From Bigelowiella natans CCMP2755 (Eukaryota; Protista; Cercozoa): a stretch of DNA of 64,000 nucleotides. This document shows positions 13,296 to 26,151 of the stretch, one piece after another. The stretch lies in the NCBI GenBank assembly GCA_000320545.1, contig ADNK01000029.1, forward strand, positions 1 to 64,000, written 5' to 3'. A program made the position numbers and the translations under genes. The notes beneath the pieces are model-generated. The model saw only the letters and a list, made by a program, of their open reading frames with translations, made no database searches and was not told where the DNA came from. How positions within the stretch are numbered: position 1 is the stretch's first letter; each line of letters opens with the position of its first letter.

Positions 13296-13578
13296 ATGAA
13301 GCAGCTGTACATCGCATACCTTCTCTTCTGCATCATCTTAGAAGTCTCCCGCGCACAGTGTCCATACAATGCGAACATTTCCACCATATGTGCCAAGGAG
13401 GCTGCATGTCTGGATAAGCTGAAAGCTTCGAACCCACTCGTCCTTCAAAGCTGGCAAGGATGTCCATGCTCAGGGTAAAACAGCCTTCAAAAAGAGACAT
13501 AAAGAAGAAGACGACGACGAATAAGAAGGAGAGAGTCAGGCAACAAGGGTTGAGGGATCGAAGAGAGAAAAGAGAATG

Positions 13579-13614
<36 letters not shown>

Positions 13615-14759
13615 GGAGGGGGGGGGGGGTGCATAAATAAGTATGCAACGAAAAGATGGGCGCAACGAGACATTCTTCCAAAGATTAAACGGAAATCTTA
13701 TGATCTGTATGCTCTCGAATAAATCAGGAACAGTACGCAATCCTCATGGCTTGGCGTAGAGTGCATGGATTATGGTGGCTGCTGGCACGTATCTAACCTG
13801 TCCCTCGTGGGGCTGAAGCTCGAGGGGACTCTTCCTGGTTGCGTCTTCAACGGGAGTCTGGGCGGACTAAAAGCCTTAAATCTAAGAAACAACAGTATCT
13901 CGGGCACACTTCCTACAGAGATCGACTCCAATTCTTATCTCCGACAGATGCAGGCGGGAATTAATCGTATCTCAGGCTGGCTGCCTCACGGGTTCTTGGA
14001 CAATGGGATTCTCCTGAGCCTCCGGCTCCAGAATAACTCTATAAGCGGATCCCTGCCCTCCCAGGTCATTAATGCTCTCCCACCATTTGAACCCTTCATC
14101 ATATATCGTACAAGAGACAGAAACAACGATCCACCTGGTGGTAGAGAATATTCACGTGCCCCCCCCTTCCTTCTCCTTCACTCCTTCTGTCCTGGCCATA
14201 GGCAAACAACTGCTCAATAAGTCATTTGGAACTAAGCGGAAATCGGCTGAGCGGAAGGGTTCCAGGTTGGCTGTTTACAAAGGTGAATAATTCTATCGCC
14301 CTCTCCAGGAATAACTTTTCCGGCGAGCTGCCCTTCAGTGACCAGTCCGAGGCTATCAACACTACCACCCTGTCGCATATTCTGCTTATTCACAATATGC
14401 TAAGTGGCACGCTACCGCCCTGGATCGCGACAGGTTCTCATTGTTTCAATTTCAAAAAGAGAGGAGGAGGGGCAACAATGTCAAGGAAGTCTCGTGAAGA
14501 TTTTCCAGTAGTAGTAGCAAAGGGTGTTTAATCGTGCGTGCAATCAGCTCCTGTACGCTCATCGATCGGCCACTGTCCGTCGCATGTACATATACATTTA
14601 GGCTCTGTGGAGAAACTCCTTCTCGAAAACAATAGTTTCTCTGGATATATGCCTAGTTTTGGTGGCAATCTGGAGATGCTCGAGTAATCATCATGTTGCC
14701 GTCGTTGTACTGCTACTACTAACTACTACTACTACTACTACTACTATTACTACTACATC

Positions 14760-14793
<34 letters not shown>

Positions 14794-14984
14794 AGTGGTG
14801 GTGGTAGTAGAGTATCAGTAGTAATAACAGTATCCTTTTATTTCCATGGGGTAGATCTCTCCTCTCTACCTGGTCTTCTGATTTCTCCTGCTCGATCAAC
14901 ACTGTTTTCGTGCTTTCATGAGAAAGAACTCTACGCATAAAATCCATCCCAAACGCGCAGCATACACATAACGAAGGGGGGGGG

Positions 14985-15031
<47 letters not shown>

Positions 15032-15918
15032 TGTATGGATACTCGCATATGATATTCAAATGTCACGTTAATGAGCTGTAATTTCAGTCTCTCCCAAAAC
15101 GTCTTGAGCGGATATATTCCAGAGAGCCTATGTAAGCCGAGATGAGAGAGGGGAAAAAAGGGGGGGGGAGTGAATCTAAGGATGGCAGATGGATGCATAC
15201 GCACACACAAACACACACACCCACACACCCACACACAGTGCTTTTGGGTGTGCCTAGCATGACACACAAATAATATATACGAATACCATGCCGCACACAT
15301 TTCACCAGTGCTTTCTTGTTATTTGCAACAACAACAATAACAACAACAACATCTCAACTGGGGGTAGGTGGTTCGAGCTTGATCAAATCGCTTCGCTTCA
15401 GCAAAAACAGAGTCTCTGGCACTCTGCCGCCTTGTCTCCTCCAGGTTCATCATATATGTGTTATTTGTTGATAGGTGTGTAGCATGATGCAGCTGTTCCG
15501 TGTGCCAGCCTGCTCTGATATTTTCTTCTATCCTCTCCCCCAAACGCACAGAATGTATCGTCGCTGCAGGGCCCATACAACAAAATCAGTGGGTATTTCC
15601 CGTCGTCTTCTTCGTTGAATGTGGAGCAAGCTGCGAGGAACCTGCAGCAGGTTGCTGCCTCCACTTAAATTTCTTCATTTTTCCATCCAACACGTATTGA
15701 TTGATTTGATGGCCGTCACACTCCTCAATCAACAACACACATCCCATGTAAACTTCAACAACCAAGAGCCGCTTGCGCGTATTTCCGTTCTGATTCGCTA
15801 TGGCGACGTTAGTTGTGTGTGAATGTATGTTTTCCTTTGTCCTCCTCCTCGTCCTCCTCCTTCTTCCTTCACCGCCCTTTCTTGACTGATTGCTGCCGGA
15901 CAAACCGACCGATTGGTG

Positions 15919-15949
<31 letters not shown>

Positions 15950-16268
15950 GTTGTTAGGTTACTATGAATGATAACAAGATATCCGGAACGGTACCTTTGT
16001 GGATCAACCGCCTAAGCAATCTCAACTACTTGAAATCCGATAACAACAAGCTCTCAGGGTTGTTGCCTATTTGCCACCCAGTGCCTTTTGCTTCGACTCG
16101 CGACCGATTCTTACCCCACTTTCGCTGCGCGTCGTCGTCTATTGGATTTATTCTTGTTCTCCTCCTCCTCGCACGGTGGGGTCTTTGTTTGTCATCAGGA
16201 CATTGTCCCAGGATATTTGCCGCCCTGGACTCACGAGGCTGCTGGCCTTCTCCGGCAACTATCTCAGC

Positions 16269-16303
<35 letters not shown>

Positions 16304-17114
16304 TCTTCTTTCAACCTTATCATCCTTGTGAGATCCAAAATGAATGATTCCCCCCCCCCCCCCCCCCAAAGCGCGCTCCTCTAGTTCAAAACGTTTTCTT
16401 GGGGCGAGGGCATAAAGAGAAAGGAGAATGGGGAAAGACAAAAGGGCACGCGTGTTTGAGTTTTTGGTGCGTGCGTGTGCGTTCTTTTAGGATATCTTCC
16501 CGAGTGCCCTGGCGTGTTTTTACAGTACAGCCTTTACAACAATCGATTCTCTGGTAAGACAACACCATTCCTCTGTCGCGCTAGCATCTACTGTCTGAAA
16601 GAGCAAGAATTTGGCTGCTCACGTCGCCGTTGCCGTCGCCGTCGTTGGTTTTGTTATTGTGATTGCCATTATGTATGTTACTATTTCCGCGCAGGATATA
16701 TCCCTCCTGGTCTCAGCACCGTTACAAGCCTTTTAGTCGTTGCAATCAACAACAATCGCATATCAGGCAATAAATAACAGACATATCAATGAAGATGAAG
16801 AGGGTGGCATCACGTATTATTAATATAAAATAATGAGAGATAGGGGAGGACAACCGTGAGTGGCGTGAAATAACACGAGGGAGAGAGGAGGAGGAGGAGA
16901 GACGCAACGATTTGCTTTCGCACATTCATTCCCTGTGCAAAAAAATAGTGATGATGATATTATCAATTTTTCCAAATCATCGTCTCTGAACACTGTATTG
17001 ATGTGTAGCCTCCCCCCCCCTCCTCTGTTGTACTCAGGAACGCTTCCAAACCTTGTTTCTCCTATCCTCAATACGCTCTCGGTAGGAATAGAAGAAGAGA
17101 AAACAGTAGACGAG

Positions 17115-23997: not shown

Positions 23998-24029
<32 letters not shown>

Positions 24030-24192
24030 CTTGGCTGTGGTCGTTTTCGAAACACGTTCCTATGTTTCCAGGGAGAATCTGGACTTGCTAAAGGCCCGCG
24101 TTGCCGCACCCGATAACATAGACTTAGGATCGTTCTACACCACGTAGTCGCAGCTTTTATTCAAAAACCTTTTCCGATAACAAGAAGAAAAT

Positions 24193-24235
<43 letters not shown>

Positions 24236-24510
24236 AAAAATAAAGGAAGACTGCTTGCTTCGATCTGAAAACGAATATACTTCCGTGCATAACGCATGAA
24301 TATGCAAAAGGTATCTGACAACGGCGAGCGTGTGCAGCCCATCGTTCAGGTATGGGTTTTGCTCTCGCCGAGCAGTCGATGTCCTCGGGACATTTTATGC
24401 GTATAAATGGGTCTGCAAGGTCTTCGCACAGAGTATTGGCAGCCTCTATTTCTCGCTGGTGATCGATCCAACATCGACTTTACACATCTACCTTCAAATA
24501 TAATACACAC

Positions 24511-24550
<40 letters not shown>

Positions 24551-24604
24551 TACTTATTTAGCTATTCTTTACTATCGGACTATATTCCGAAAGACGCACA
24601 GATG

Positions 24605-24642
<38 letters not shown>

Positions 24643-25065
24643 CGGTTTTACGCGAAGATGTCTCCAGTAACCTCGGCAAGAATGCAAACTACTGAACTCC
24701 ATCGCTCTATAGACGAACATGCATGTTCCCTACCAAACAGTCAGAAGAGGAGGAGGAGGATGATGATACACTGTTGATATATATGTACTTCCCCCTCTTC
24801 CTCAGATGGTGGGGCCAATCTCGCACTACTTTTTCCAATGGTCGATGCATAGGACTGTGGACTTTGACGTCTTCTACGCGGACGTTGTCGGATCGTTGGT
24901 GGAAATAGTAAGCGCCGTCACACTGACTCTTGTTACCCGTAAAATAAAAAGATTTTGCTTGGGATTTTCAGTGAGCAGTATGTCGTTTGTGCGTATTGTG
25001 CTTATTGCGCAGGTGTCGCTTGGGCCGTTCGTGCCGATTATCTTTCTCTTTGGTCAAAACAACAA

Positions 25066-25103
<38 letters not shown>

Positions 25104-26151
25104 GTGTGCACATTATATTTACACATATATGACGATCTTTGCCTATCTCCGGATACAAAGGAACGCTTTCCCTGGCCATGGAGTACATCACACAGTAATA
25201 GACATTCTCTCTCTCTCTATTTACCCCCCCCCCCCCCTACACGCCCCCTCCCTCCTTGATTTCCATCATACCCCGTCCTCACCCTCAAACGCACGGCAGC
25301 AACTCATATTAGAAATTCTCGAGGATTCATTGTCCATTCCTTACGATTCCTTCCGTCGGCAGGTACTTAATTTTCAAGATCGGGATATATTCAAACGTGA
25401 TGAAGAAGAAGAAGAAGAGCTCAGCAAAGGACGATAGGAAGGACGACAGCAGCGGCGCGCACTCAGAGGACACCGCGATCGAGAACTTCGTTCGGCTTCC
25501 AAAGTTCCAGGTGATGAGTAATGTGCTCTGCTCCGTCCTCATGATCATCAACGACGTCCGTGTACTAACACTCTGCTGCTGCAGATCCACATGGGAACGA
25601 TGCTCTTTTGCGTGTTGGCGATACTGTTCTGGTTTGAAAACGGCTTACAAGGCCGTTTCGCGCTCTTGTACACCATCGTCGTCATCACTCTCGCGGGGCT
25701 CGTTGCCGCTGTCTCAATCAACGCGTACGTGCATCAGAGCGAATCGAATACGCACATGCGCAAACTCCTCAAAACACTTAAGGATAGAACGTGTTGCTAC
25801 GTCTGGGGTCGTCCGCCGTGCAATAACTAATGAAGCTCTTTCTCATCAGATGGATAGCTTGTTGCGGGTGCCATCGATCTATGGACGATGACAAGAACGG
25901 GGAAGAAGAATTGGATGCTTGCGACGATAACGACGAGATTGAGGTTTAAATCACACCCTCCTCTAGCGAAAGACTTAATCTGTGAATTTGATCTTATAAG
26001 TAAATACCTGCACGCTCACTCATATTTATTTTCAAAAACATTACCACAGATGGACGACGTAGTATATGATAGAACCGATGGTCTGCGAGAGTTGACCCCT
26101 CGTCCTATCTCAGAAGATAGCCGTAGACCGATCAATCGCGTTCTAATTTAA
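13296..26151 (+). CDS. Signal peptide + long plant-type LRR ectodomain + about 10-11 TM membrane domain, no kinase; dozens of small exons
   Basis: MKQLYIAYLLFCIILEVSRA is a signal peptide, followed by a Cys cap (SWQGCPC) and many LxxLxLxxNxxSGxLP repeats from 13760 to ~19770 (LKALNLRNNSISGTLP, LELSGNRLSGRVP, LKSDNNKLSG, LANNSLSGELP). Hydrophobic exons occupy ~20640-25730 (TGFVFIVFLVAVVYIF; AVVVALLLLYT; SLWMIPCFVLSIPTISYV; RLLLILQ|AFQTIVPLIVMIILDQ; VSLGPFVPIIFLF; MLFCVLAILFW; FALLYTIVVITLAGLVAAV). An acidic tail ends ...RPINRVLI* at 26151. Confidence 0.85.

What the first reader, a model, noticed from the sequence alone, without database searches (positions are those of the whole stretch)
13296..26151. 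LRR ectodomain fused to a ~10-TM domain resembling TMC/OSCA/TMEM16 channels: candidate ligand-gated receptor-channel
Seen: a signal peptide, a long run of plant-RLK-type LRRs (xLxxNxxSGxLP), then about 10-11 hydrophobic segments and no kinase domain. The segment at ~24349-25195 splices to FCSRRAVDVLGTFYAYKW...TVDFDVFYADVVGSLVEI|VSLGPFVPIIFLF|GTLSLAMEYIT. Known: the TMC domain runs from CWETxVGQExYKL to FDI...GxxFxPLLP, and OSCA/anoctamin pore-lining helices carry a similar Y...PL..F pattern. Classical LRR receptors are single-pass (RLK/RLP/TLR) or 7-TM (LGR). Inference: this may be an extracellular pattern sensor directly coupled to an ion channel or scramblase. The family match is by eye and weak.
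Basis: partly seen in the sequence, partly recalled or inferred. Interest (0 to 1): 0.85.

Follow-up and report, generated by a model that had tools for sequence, protein, structure and literature searches.

The report
LRR receptor fused to OSCA/TMEM63-like channel
This alga (Bigelowiella natans) has one spliced gene that joins a plant-receptor-like leucine-rich-repeat arm outside the cell to an 11-helix membrane domain shaped like OSCA/TMEM63 stretch-activated ion channels; I found this combination described nowhere, and it may be a channel controlled directly from outside the cell.

Summary
On the + strand, 13296-26151 is one intron-rich gene of Bigelowiella natans. It encodes a signal peptide, a Cys-rich cap, about 27 plant-type LRRs, a conserved stalk and 11 TM helices, with no kinase. 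Transcript contigs give GT..AG joints from 20.7 kb to the stop and one open frame. One contig carries the last stalk exon and TM0-TM2 and runs on upstream of the stretch laid.

The membrane domain is a very divergent relative of OSCA/TMEM63. Pfam's RSN1_7TM model misses it. A family profile finds only TMEM63/OSCA chains among solved structures (E = 2.4e-7). AlphaFold models of the intronless paralog and of a full-length homolog match TMEM63A at Z 26.5 and 30.8, above TMEM16F (19.4) and TMC-1 (18.0). The homolog's ectodomain matches plant MIK2, RGFR1 and BRI1 at Z 31-33.

All 18 long homologs tested carry LRRs, and two are single uninterrupted ORFs. The canonical cytosolic domain is replaced by a disordered linker. 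The best-conserved parts are extracellular loops with five near-invariant cysteines. Gating from outside, by ligand or by pull, is inferred, not shown.

The scan reached the same reading before on other DNA of this genome (notes s1-724822, s1-738981). The folds and profile searches used the paralog and homologs. The joined window protein was sent to no search or fold tool.

The parts
13296..13474 (+). Exon 1: start codon, signal-peptide-like hydrophobic N-terminus, Cys-rich N-terminal cap ending in GCPCS
   Evidence: ORF; cap motif shared with P0001 and P0004. The donor GT at 13475 and the phase fit exon 2. Not read-verified.
13728..14064 (+). Exon 2: W.GV.C cap motif plus LRR units 1-4
   Evidence: Pfam LRR_1 25.3 bits (cut-off 20.6) and LRR_8; tblastn to P0001 and P0004 N-termini at E about 1e-9.
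14202..19551 (+). Array of short LRR-coding exons (about 22 further LRR units, mostly one unit per exon). Exon borders here are approximate.
   Evidence: LRR HMM hits in + frames; Pfam LRR_1 28.8 bits on 14202-14432. The dynamic-programming exon chain has no read support, and several of its exons are doubtful.
19722..19773 (+). Last LRR exon, with the family-wide HNN.[IL]SC motif
   Evidence: aligned with P0001, P0002 and P0004.
19997..20345 (+). Two stalk exons (19997-20048, 20286-20345) carrying GT[IV]LMGN...P.WV..STR, conserved in the family
   Evidence: Splice sites and frame; alignment. The reads tool masked 20200-20409 as repeat, so these rest on homology and frame only.
20451..20700 (+). 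TM0 (exons 20451-20511 and 20637-20700)
   Evidence: Joint 20700>20809 in transcript contigs; exon lengths fit the contig depth; mapped to paralog helix 2-30.
20809..21361 (+). Intracellular loop 1, TM1 and the first part of extracellular loop 1 with the near-invariant Cys (FYDC). Exons 20809-20853, 21079-21140, 21277-21361.
   Evidence: Joints; exon ends and frame. tblastn of the paralog places its VPIF..YYDC stretch at 21290-21361.
21484..22002 (+). Rest of extracellular loop 1 and TM2 (exons 21484-21525, 21646-21679, 21871-22002)
   Evidence: Joints 21525>21646, 21679>21871 and 22002>22088; mapping.
22088..22514 (+). Large exon: about 170 aa of acidic, low-complexity cytosolic linker between TM2 and TM3 (in place of the PHM7_cyt domain) and the start of TM3. 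It contains the (GAA)n run at 22303-22352.
   Evidence: Contig pieces 22087-22303 and 22352-22513. Only one frame is open across it. No Pfam hit.
22701..23156 (+). TM3, extracellular loop 2 (LPSNNTFG, family motif LP.DNTLG) and TM4. Exons 22701-22823 and 23071-23156.
   Evidence: Joints; family profile A1 hits 22669-22893 at E = 1.5e-6; mapping.
23327..23639 (+). TM5 (exons 23327-23367 and 23592-23639)
23766..24458 (+). Cys-rich extracellular loop 3 (DQGC..W..C ... C.P....G.CSRR) and TM6a. Exons 23766-23836, 24072-24143, 24311-24458.
   Evidence: Joints; A1 profile hit 24300-24464 at E = 7.5e-10; tblastn to P0002 at 59% identity; the four near-invariant cysteines are present.
24806..25194 (+). 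TM6b, TVDFDV.YA motif, TM7 and TM8 with the G...P turn. Exons 24806-24907, 25013-25052, 25161-25194.
   Evidence: Joints; identical to P0018 and P0115. This is the stretch that aligns to TMEM63B 589-746 in the profile search.
25363..25724 (+). Lys- and acid-rich cytosolic loop, TM9 and TM10 (exons 25363-25510 and 25585-25724)
   Evidence: Joints; A1 profile hit 25576-25791 at E = 2.1e-6; P0018.
25850..26151 (+). Acidic cytosolic C-terminal tail and stop codon (exons 25850-25943 and 26050-26151)
   Evidence: Joints, one of them also seen in a raw RNA-seq read of X21; P0018 is 204/206 identical.

Best explanation
The region is one gene for a protein of about 1,500 aa with three parts. Outside the cell sits a plant-RLK-type LRR solenoid. 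It is held by a conserved stalk directly on TM0 of an 11-helix domain with the OSCA/TMEM63 fold. That is the TMEM16/TMC/OSCA superfamily, in which each subunit carries its own pore or lipid groove. Shown here: the gene structure, its transcription and the single open frame. Also shown: the fold and the OSCA/TMEM63-like topology (N-terminus out, TM0 present), and that LRR plus channel domain is the fixed architecture of a family spread over several protist lineages. Inferred: the membrane domain still conducts, most likely as a non-selective cation channel like its relatives. Also inferred: its gate is driven from the extracellular side, where ligand binding to the LRR arm, or a pull on it, is passed through the stalk, TM0 and the disulfide-braced extracellular loops to the pore helices TM3-TM7. 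On this reading it does in one polypeptide what plants do in three steps (LRR receptor, then BIK1 kinase, then OSCA1.3).
For: Gene and transcript: 15 listed GT..AG joints, and pieces giving more, in transcript contigs of three studies; one open frame from 19722 to the stop at 26151. B. natans transcript-derived proteins P0018 and P0115 match it.

Homology to the paralog: local blastp of the spliced C-terminal model against P0001 gives E = 1.5e-99 over 767 columns, from the last LRR to TM10. Exon-by-exon hits to family profile A1 are collinear.

Fold: paralog AlphaFold model with pLDDT 81 and pTM 0.78. Foldseek's top 50 are all TMEM63, OSCA or TMEM16. VIA-align gives Z 26.5 to TMEM63A (398 aa, 4.4 A), 25.4 to TMEM63C and 25.3 to OSCA3.1, starting at chain residue 2. 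TMEM16F scores 19.4 and TMC-1 18.0, both lacking TM0. This was replicated on full-length homolog P0053: TMEM63A Z 30.8 and OSCA3.1 30.4 for residues 448-960; MIK2 33.3, RGFR1 33.1 and BRI1 31.5 for residues 25-447.

Sequence: profile A1 against PDB sequences returns 10 TMEM63/OSCA/CSC1 chains among its 11 hits at E up to 10, best E = 2.4e-7, with two collinear stretches; the eleventh is a designed helical protein at E = 0.39. The ESM Atlas top cluster is RSN1_7TM at 0.90.

Architecture is fixed: 18 of 18 homologs longer than 850 aa that I tested have N-terminal LRRs. P0002 and P0004 are uninterrupted ORFs on genomic contigs.

Coupling from outside: extracellular loops EL1 and EL2 are the most conserved regions (2.2 bits), against 1.3-1.8 bits for most TM helices (TM3 0.9) and 0.2-1.0 for cytosolic loops. 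Five near-invariant extracellular cysteines are joined by a sixth in the last LRR. The full-length model has pTM 0.79 and stalk pLDDT 86-95, so AlphaFold places the LRR arm and the channel in a defined mutual position.

Relatives conduct when stretched (PMC6235560). In plants OSCA1.3 is opened downstream of an LRR receptor (PMC9194748).
Against: No function was measured. Sequence similarity to canonical OSCA is very remote. Pfam RSN1_7TM finds neither the window nor the paralog. hhalign against a small canonical alignment gives only a 48-column match at E = 0.0046 and probability 7.6%.

The canonical cytosolic PHM7_cyt domain is missing. In OSCA that domain carries the dimer contacts and the beam-like domain, so gating cannot simply be copied from OSCA.

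The folds were made on the paralog and a homolog, not on the window protein. The window protein also lacks the near-invariant TM6 proline (Q/S in its place).

The pTM argument for a rigid LRR-channel contact rests on a model whose coordinates I could not inspect. Exons upstream of 19722 have no read support here. Raw RNA-seq depth is low (16 reads in about 6% of run X21).
Confidence: 0.55

Rival explanations
1. It is an ordinary membrane-tension-gated OSCA/TMEM63-type channel. The LRR arm does not gate it and serves only to place, cluster or anchor the channel, for example at filopodia, at cell-cell or cell-prey contacts, or on surface material.
For: All characterised relatives are inherently mechanosensitive (PMC6235560). 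The fold, including TM0 and the broken TM6, is kept. LRR domains often act as adhesion or scaffolding modules (general knowledge).
Against: The cytosolic domain of canonical channels is replaced by a disordered linker of variable length. The strongest family-specific conservation lies in extracellular loops and in the LRR-TM0 stalk. B. natans keeps canonical RSN1_7TM genes that could supply plain tension sensing.
Confidence: 0.25
2. The membrane domain works mainly as a lipid scramblase or membrane remodeller, switched on when the LRR arm meets its target, rather than as an ion channel.
For: The same fold supports scrambling in TMEM16, and mutated OSCA/TMEM63 can scramble (PMC11534332). TMEM16F and fungal TMEM16 scramblases are also good structural matches (Z 16-19).
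Against: Matches to OSCA/TMEM63 are clearly better than to TMEM16 (Z 24-31 against 16-19) and include TM0. No Anoctamin Pfam hit was found. Wild-type OSCA/TMEM63 are described chiefly as channels.
Confidence: 0.1
3. The OSCA-like domain has lost transport and is only a multi-pass anchor or signalling scaffold for an LRR receptor.
For: Great divergence from canonical OSCA. Loss of the cytosolic domain. The window copy lacks the conserved TM6 proline.
Against: TM4-TM9 are conserved across distant protists at 1.6-1.8 bits per column with near-invariant Pro, Gly, Arg and Lys positions. A mere anchor would not need this. The 11-helix fold is predicted with pLDDT above 90.
Confidence: 0.07
4. Gene-model artefact: an LRR gene and a separate channel gene merely lie head to tail.
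For: Transcript assemblies break at the (GAA)n run at 22303-22352. The JGI catalogue holds only a 148-aa fragment for this locus. Upstream exons have no read support here.
Against: The break lies inside one exon whose only open frame runs through it. The upstream contig already carries TM0-TM2 and runs on upstream of the stretch laid. The paralog aligns without interruption from the last LRR to TM10. P0002 and P0004 are single ORFs. All 18 long homologs tested have both parts.
Confidence: 0.03

Closest known systems
OSCA / TMEM63 / CSC1 mechanically activated cation channels (TC 1.A.17.5; Pfam RSN1_TM + PHM7_cyt + RSN1_7TM)
   Same: Eleven TM helices with an extra N-terminal TM0 and the N-terminus outside. 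A long cytosolic insertion lies between TM2 and TM3. TM6 is broken and TM7-TM8 form a short hairpin with a G...P turn. These are the best structural matches (Z 24-31 over about 400 residues) and the only significant hits of the family profile among solved structures.
   Different: A large extracellular LRR domain and stalk sit before TM0. The PHM7_cyt domain is absent and replaced by a disordered linker of variable length. A 65-residue loop between TM5 and TM6 carries four near-invariant cysteines, and the TM1-TM2 and TM3-TM4 loops are conserved. Pfam RSN1_7TM does not recognise it. Identity to solved channels is 10-16%.
TMEM16 (anoctamin) channels and scramblases, and TMC channels
   Same: The same ten-helix core fold (Z 16-19.4 for TMEM16, 18.0 for C. 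elegans TMC-1).
   Different: They lack TM0, so the alignments start near model residue 30, and they have cytosolic N-termini. No Anoctamin or TMC Pfam hit was found, and the TMC signature motif was not found. TMC is force-coupled through separate tip-link and partner proteins, not through a fused ectodomain (general knowledge).
Plant LRR receptor kinases and receptor-like proteins (MIK2, RGFR1, BRI1, HAESA, PEPR1, FLS2; the Symbiodinium homolog is auto-named 'GSO1')
   Same: The ectodomain of the family is a plant-specific-type 24-residue LRR solenoid with an N-terminal Cys cap. Z is 27-33 and sequence identity about 30% to these ectodomains.
   Different: Those receptors have one TM helix and a kinase or a short tail. 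Here the output module is an 11-TM channel-like domain and there is no kinase.
FLS2-BIK1-OSCA1.3 pathway of plant stomatal immunity
   Same: An LRR pattern receptor controls an OSCA-family Ca2+-permeable channel (PMC9194748).
   Different: In plants the receptor, the kinase and the channel are three separate proteins, and control is by phosphorylation of a cytosolic loop. Here receptor and channel are one chain, and the cytosolic loops are the least conserved parts.
Polycystin-1 (PKD1) and LRRC8/VRAC
   Same: These are channel-related proteins that also carry LRRs. Polycystin-1 even has N-terminal extracellular LRRs followed by 11 TM helices (general knowledge; PMC12513491 for its N-terminus acting on the channel complex).
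   Different: Polycystin-1 has a TRP-like channel core plus GPS, REJ and PLAT domains. LRRC8 has a pannexin-like 4-TM core and cytosolic C-terminal LRRs. Neither fold appeared among the listed best matches.

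Membership tests
OSCA/TMEM63/CSC1 | Pfam RSN1_7TM (PF02714) at or above its gathering score | tested here: not met
   No hit on window exons or on the paralog. The best hit in the family is P0007 at 22.1 bits, below the cut-off of 28.7. A genome-wide PF02714 search hits four other contigs (three of them above the cut-off), not this one.
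OSCA/TMEM63/CSC1 | N-terminal three-helix module (RSN1_TM, PF13967): TM0 with the N-terminus outside, then a TM1-TM2 hairpin | tested here: inconclusive
   Pfam gives only 14.6-14.9 bits against a cut-off of 27. However, family profile positions 68-149 align to TMEM63B 138-230, and positions 65-148 to TMEM63A 71-217. Structural alignments also start at residues 2-4 of OSCA chains. The window has all three helices.
OSCA/TMEM63/CSC1 | Folded cytosolic domain between TM2 and TM3 (PHM7_cyt, PF14703) | tested here: not met
   No PF14703 hit in any of 23 family proteins or in the window linker exon. In the model, residues 202-304 have pLDDT below 50. The region has low occupancy and 0.2 bits of conservation.
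OSCA/TMEM63/CSC1 | Eleven-helix fold superposable on solved OSCA/TMEM63 structures | tested here: met
   Z 26.5 (TMEM63A), 25.4 (TMEM63C), 25.3 (OSCA3.1) and 24.6 (OSCA1.2) for the paralog model. Z 30.8 and 30.4 for homolog P0053. This was tested on relatives of the window protein, which align to it end to end.
OSCA/TMEM63/CSC1 | Significant sequence-profile relationship | tested here: met
   hmmsearch of A1 against PDB sequences gives TMEM63B E = 2.4e-7, TMEM63A 7.6e-5 and TMEM63C 8e-3; no other family scores below E = 0.39. The support is weak in hhalign against a shallow canonical alignment (E = 0.0046).
OSCA/TMEM63/CSC1 | Mechanically activated cation current | not testable with these tools
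   Needs electrophysiology.
TMC | TMC domain (CWETxVGQExYKL signature) and a cytosolic N-terminus | tested here: not met
   No TMC Pfam hit. The N-terminus is extracellular, with TM0. TMC-1 scores Z 18.0, below OSCA/TMEM63.
TMEM16/anoctamin | Anoctamin domain (PF04547) and a ten-TM core without TM0 | tested here: not met
   No PF04547 hit. TMEM16 alignments omit TM0 and score Z 16-19. The Ca2+-site residues were not examined.
Plant-type LRR receptor kinase / receptor-like protein | Extracellular plant-specific LRR solenoid with Cys caps | tested here: met
   Pfam LRR_1 and LRR_8 on window exons; about 27 units. The homolog ectodomain scores Z 27-33 with about 30% identity to MIK2, RGFR1, BRI1, HAESA and FLS2.
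Plant-type LRR receptor kinase / receptor-like protein | Single TM helix followed by a kinase or a short tail | tested here: not met
   Eleven TM helices and no kinase hit.

The most novel reading that the evidence does not exclude
This would be an ionotropic LRR receptor: binding of an extracellular ligand to the LRR arm, or a pull on it, directly opens an OSCA/TMEM63-type pore. It would be the first ligand- or tether-gated member of the TMEM16/TMC/OSCA superfamily and the first channel gated by a fused LRR domain. It would also be a natural one-chain version of the plant LRR-receptor-to-OSCA route to a Ca2+ signal, and it is spread across Rhizaria, dinoflagellates, Telonemia and other marine protists.
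Probability: 0.3. Interest if true: 0.9.

Novelty: new variant of a known kind. Interest (0 to 1): 0.72.

Why it matters
OSCA/TMEM63 channels are regarded as sensors of membrane tension, and how they are opened is still debated. A natural branch that has dropped the cytosolic domain and bolted a peptide-receptor-type LRR arm onto TM0 offers a new handle on gating. It shows which extracellular elements (stalk, TM0, Cys-braced loops) could move the pore.

It also suggests that the link between LRR receptors and OSCA channels, known in plant immunity as a kinase relay, has been hard-wired by gene fusion in other eukaryotes. That is a Rosetta-stone type argument for a functional link.

For protist biology it gives a candidate for fast surface sensing of prey, partners, mates or substrate in organisms without receptor kinases of the plant type.

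In practice the family is invisible to Pfam's channel models. It is annotated only by its LRRs (for example as 'GSO1') or broken into fragments, so it is missed in ion-channel inventories.

Tried and rejected
- Pfam on ten post-LRR exons by reference found nothing useful.
- Searching the own genome with one exon found the paralog, and that opened the case.
- The search for homologous proteins with the paralog's TM region found only itself and P0002, because of the tool's word-index limit.
- hhalign of family profile A1 against one canonical B. natans OSCA ORF was not significant: E = 0.082, probability 0.7%.
- hhalign of A1 against a nine-sequence canonical alignment A3 was also not significant: E = 0.0046, probability 7.6%, 48 columns at TM7-TM8. 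Profile-profile support is therefore weak; the case rests on the PDB profile search and on the folds.
- The first Foldseek call failed and was repeated.
- A codon-bias exon chainer for 13296-19773 produced junk exons in microsatellites. A second version with LRR-HMM bonuses and repeat masking is better but still wrong in places, for example it splits exon 1. The upstream exon borders are therefore given as approximate only.
- My first model read 21277-21525 as one exon through a Glu/Lys/Met run. Alignment to the paralog showed an extra intron there and a different frame for 21277-21361.
- I first took P0002 for the window's own protein. It is a homolog from another organism.
- Polycystin-like, GPCR and transporter readings were dropped after the fold searches.
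- Literature searches for an LRR-OSCA/TMEM63 fusion found none. This is absence in the held library only.
- No dimer prediction was run. Two copies exceed the size limit, and the canonical dimer interface (the cytosolic domain) is absent.

Full report
**What is there.** The window is eukaryotic DNA (GC about 45%) with very many short exons and microsatellite-rich introns. Exact look-ups of matching database proteins name the organism as Bigelowiella natans, a chlorarachniophyte alga of the Rhizaria. The assembly has 91.4 Mb in 3,736 contigs, and the window is contig C3708.

**Transcripts and gene model.**
- Public runs of this species hold 25-29% of the sampled words of 20200-26151, which is the share expected for exons.
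- I laid three of these contig sets and one raw RNA-seq run on that stretch. This gave 15 listed GT..AG joints, plus contig pieces that define further ones.
- After correcting for the tool's 'cut +N' offsets and fixing two unlisted joints from contig lengths, all exons from 21646 to 26151 join into one open frame ending at the stop at 26149-26151.
- My first reading of 21277-21525 as a single exon was wrong. Alignment to a paralog and the splice sites show exons 21277-21361 and 21484-21525.
- Further upstream, splice sites, frame and homology give the exons 19722-19773, 19997-20048, 20286-20345, 20451-20511, 20637-20700, 20809-20853 and 21079-21140.
- Together these are 26 exons and 25 GT..AG introns of 74-347 nt. 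Sixteen of the introns carry a di- or trinucleotide repeat. The exons give 787 codons without a stop.
- The transcript assemblies break at a (GAA)n run at 22303-22352. This lies inside one exon (22088-22514) whose only open frame runs through the repeat.
- The upstream contig is 1,642 nt in one run and 3,000 nt in another. It carries TM0-TM2 and runs on upstream of the stretch laid, by its length far into the LRR region.
P0018 differs at 2 of 206 residues.
- The JGI catalogue has only a 148-aa fragment for this locus (Bigna1 125671).

**The ectodomain.**
- The ORF at 13296 begins with a hydrophobic, signal-peptide-like segment. This is judged by eye; no predictor was run.
- It continues into a Cys-rich cap whose GCPCS motif, with W.GV.C on the next exon, is shared with the paralog and with P0004.
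- Pfam LRR_1 is above its cut-off on the two largest exons.
- An LRR HMM that I built from homologs finds 31 hits, about 27 units, between 13816 and 19767, all in + frames.
- Two exon-chaining scripts give only an approximate model, of about 1,507 aa in total.

**A paralog that can be searched by reference.**
- Searching the genome with one TM exon found a second locus, on contig C1143. There the whole post-LRR part is one uninterrupted 934-codon exon, with LRR exons upstream on the same strand.
- It is Bigna1 80454, a 1,670-aa model (P0001).
- The joined window protein was therefore sent to no search, family or fold tool.
- I joined it only inside local scripts, to check the frame, to run hydropathy and to align it to proteins the tools had returned.
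- That local alignment gives E = 1.5e-99 and 30.6% identity over 767 columns against P0001, from the last LRR to TM10. It gives 38.7% identity against P0002 over TM3-TM10.
- Window exons searched by reference hit the family profile collinearly, with E from 7.5e-10 to 4.8e-6.

**What the membrane domain is.**
- Pfam gives nothing above threshold. The only traces are RSN1_TM at 14.6 bits on the paralog and RSN1_7TM at 22.1 bits on one homolog.
- An exhaustive HMMER search with the paralog found 113 relatives. I aligned 59 of them as A1.
- The A1 profile, searched against all PDB sequences, returns 10 TMEM63B, TMEM63A, TMEM63C, CSC1 or OSCA chains among its 11 hits at E up to 10. The best is E = 2.4e-7. 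The eleventh hit is a designed helical protein at E = 0.39.
- For TMEM63B there are two collinear stretches: the TM1-TM2 hairpin, and TM7 onward.
- A template-free AlphaFold model of the paralog segment (pLDDT 81, pTM 0.78) has 11 membrane helices and a disordered stretch at residues 202-304.
- Foldseek's best 50 PDB matches are all TMEM63, OSCA or TMEM16.
- VIA-align gives Z 26.5 to TMEM63A (398 residues, 4.4 A), 25.4 to TMEM63C, 25.3 to OSCA3.1 and 24.6 to OSCA1.2. These alignments begin at the first residues of the OSCA chains, so TM0 is included.
- TMEM16F scores 19.4 and TMC-1 18.0, and both alignments start after TM0. All of these values lie far above the level the tool gives for chance helical matches (about 13).
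- The ESM Atlas also puts RSN1_7TM and Anoctamin clusters first, at 0.90 and 0.89.
- Profile-profile comparison with a shallow alignment of canonical chlorarachniophyte OSCAs is weak (E = 0.0046, 48 columns). The sequence relationship is therefore remote, and the fold carries the case.
- B. natans also has canonical RSN1_7TM genes on other contigs. This is a separate, divergent branch, with two members in this genome at the sensitivity used.

**Replication and architecture.**
- A second model, of the full-length homolog P0053 (996 aa, pLDDT 82.6, pTM 0.79), splits cleanly in the fold search.
- Its residues 25-447 match plant peptide and steroid receptor ectodomains: MIK2 Z 33.3, RGFR1 33.1, BRI1 31.5, HAESA 30.7 and FLS2 27.5, at about 30% identity.
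- Its residues 448-960 match TMEM63A (30.8), OSCA3.1 (30.4) and TMEM63C (29.8).
- All 18 homologs longer than 850 aa that I tested have LRRs before the membrane domain, and one has a CUB domain as well.
- P0002 and P0004 are single uninterrupted ORFs on genomic or metagenomic contigs. The fusion is therefore not an artefact of exon joining.
- Named sources include Telonema subtile and Symbiodinium, where the protein is auto-named 'GSO1' after its LRRs.

**Anatomy of the window protein.** In order, it consists of:
- the last LRR, with HNNKISC;
- a stalk (GTILMGN...PQWVFSSTR..ELLY);
- TM0, then a short cytosolic loop;
- TM1, then extracellular loop 1 with FYDC;
- TM2, then about 170 aa of acidic low-complexity linker;
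- TM3, then extracellular loop 2 (LPSNNTFG);
- TM4 and TM5;
- a 66-residue extracellular loop with four cysteines (DQGC..W..C ... C.P....G.CSRR);
- a broken TM6, then the TVDFDV.YA motif;
- TM7, a G...P turn and TM8, then a Lys- and acid-rich cytosolic loop;
- TM9 and TM10, then an acidic tail.

Across the family, the extracellular loops EL1 and EL2 are the best-conserved regions, at 2.2 bits per column. Most TM helices have 1.3-1.8 bits (TM3 0.9) and the cytosolic loops 0.2-1.0. Five cysteines are near-invariant and all lie outside. With the cysteine of the last LRR they make six. The window copy keeps all of these, but it has Q/S where 93% of the family have the TM6 proline.

**How it most likely works.**
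- Shown: one gene and one frame, transcription, an LRR ectodomain of the plant receptor type, an OSCA/TMEM63-type 11-helix fold with the N-terminus outside, absence of the canonical cytosolic domain, and a fixed architecture across lineages.
- From established knowledge: OSCA/TMEM63 proteins are pore-forming, mechanically activated cation channels with one pore per subunit (PMC6235560), and the fold can also move lipids (PMC11534332). In Arabidopsis, an LRR receptor complex opens OSCA1.3 through BIK1 phosphorylation (PMC9194748).
- Inferred: the domain still conducts, and its gate is driven from outside, by ligand binding to the LRR arm or by a pull on it, through the stalk, TM0 and the braced loops.
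- The pattern of conservation supports this inference. So does the high whole-chain pTM of the two-domain model, with stalk pLDDT of 86-95. I could not inspect coordinates or predicted aligned error, so this support is modest.
- I put the full statement at 0.55. The architecture and fold assignment alone I put above 0.9.
- The rivals are plain tension gating with the LRR arm used only for anchoring (0.25), a scramblase (0.10), a non-conducting scaffold (0.07) and a gene-model artefact (0.03).

**Comparison and novelty.**
- It works like, and is folded like, OSCA/TMEM63, but it fails two of that family's Pfam-defined features (RSN1_7TM score and PHM7_cyt). It also adds an ectodomain and extracellular loops that no described member has.
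- The survey of the anoctamin superfamily (PMC5868767), a 2026 TMEM63/OSCA review (PMC13494684) and a paper on OSCA evolution (PMC12806904) mention no such fusion. Full-text searches found none either. This shows absence only in the held library.
- I class it as a new variant of a known kind.

**Earlier notes of this scan.** Notes s1-724822 and s1-738981 describe an LRR receptor fused to an OSCA-like domain on other DNA of this genome and reach the same reading. I presume from their sizes that they concern the C1143 paralog, but I did not check. I tested that reading independently on the paralog. The present finding is the second copy in the genome.

**Limits.** There is no functional data. 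Both folds are of relatives, not of the window protein. The 5' two-thirds of the exon model has no read support here. The signal peptide is judged by eye. Expression in the one raw RNA-seq run is low. The taxonomic range rests on a few named sequences.

Noticed in passing
L003:6614-9418 (-) = G000:C1143, with LRR exons upstream in L004:~150-4400 (-): In the paralog (Bigna1 80454), all of TM0-TM10 and the tail lie in one 2.8-kb intronless exon, while its LRR part is split into many exons. The window copy splits the same region into at least 22 exons. This looks like 3'-biased intron loss, or intron gain in one copy.
   Followed up: partly
window 25363-26151: The JGI gene catalogue holds only a 148-aa fragment of this gene (Bigna1 125671, aug1.1_g379). 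The locus is badly under-annotated, probably because of its tiny exons and repeat-filled introns.
   Followed up: partly
window 25850-26151: Database protein P0018 (JGI/IMG contigs) differs from the window at two residues of 206 (N to D in the acidic tail, L to S near the end). Strain or allele differences are the likely cause.
   Followed up: no
window 19774-26049 (introns): Sixteen of 25 verified introns contain di- or trinucleotide repeats of six or more copies, including GA, CA and TA runs. The reads tool masked several of them, and the transcript assemblies break at a coding (GAA)n run at 22303-22352.
   Followed up: partly
G000:C1850:26412-27546, C800:10829-11293, C2544:17489-18162, C3201:1469-1597: Canonical RSN1_7TM (OSCA/CSC1-type) genes of B. 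natans. The one on C1850 has relatives carrying the full RSN1_TM + PHM7_cyt + RSN1_7TM set, including a hypothetical protein of Amorphochlora amoebiformis.
   Followed up: partly
P0016 (CAE7741147.1, Symbiodinium sp. CCMP2592): A family member is named 'GSO1' in GenBank, after a plant LRR receptor kinase, although it has the 11-TM domain and no kinase hit in Pfam. The name was transferred from the LRR part alone.
   Followed up: partly
window 24311-24458 (TM6a): The window protein has Q/S where 93% of the family have a proline at the TM6 break (paralog position 521). This could change gating or mark a degenerating copy.
   Followed up: no
window 24739-24760 and 25402-25418: Unrelated transcript contigs touch these short purine-rich stretches (loose ends and 'letters between' in the reads table). 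They are low-complexity cross-matches, not alternative splicing of this gene.
   Followed up: no
window 26849-31029: An earlier first-stage note on this window reports an EF-hand-serpin fusion just downstream. I did not examine it.
   Followed up: no
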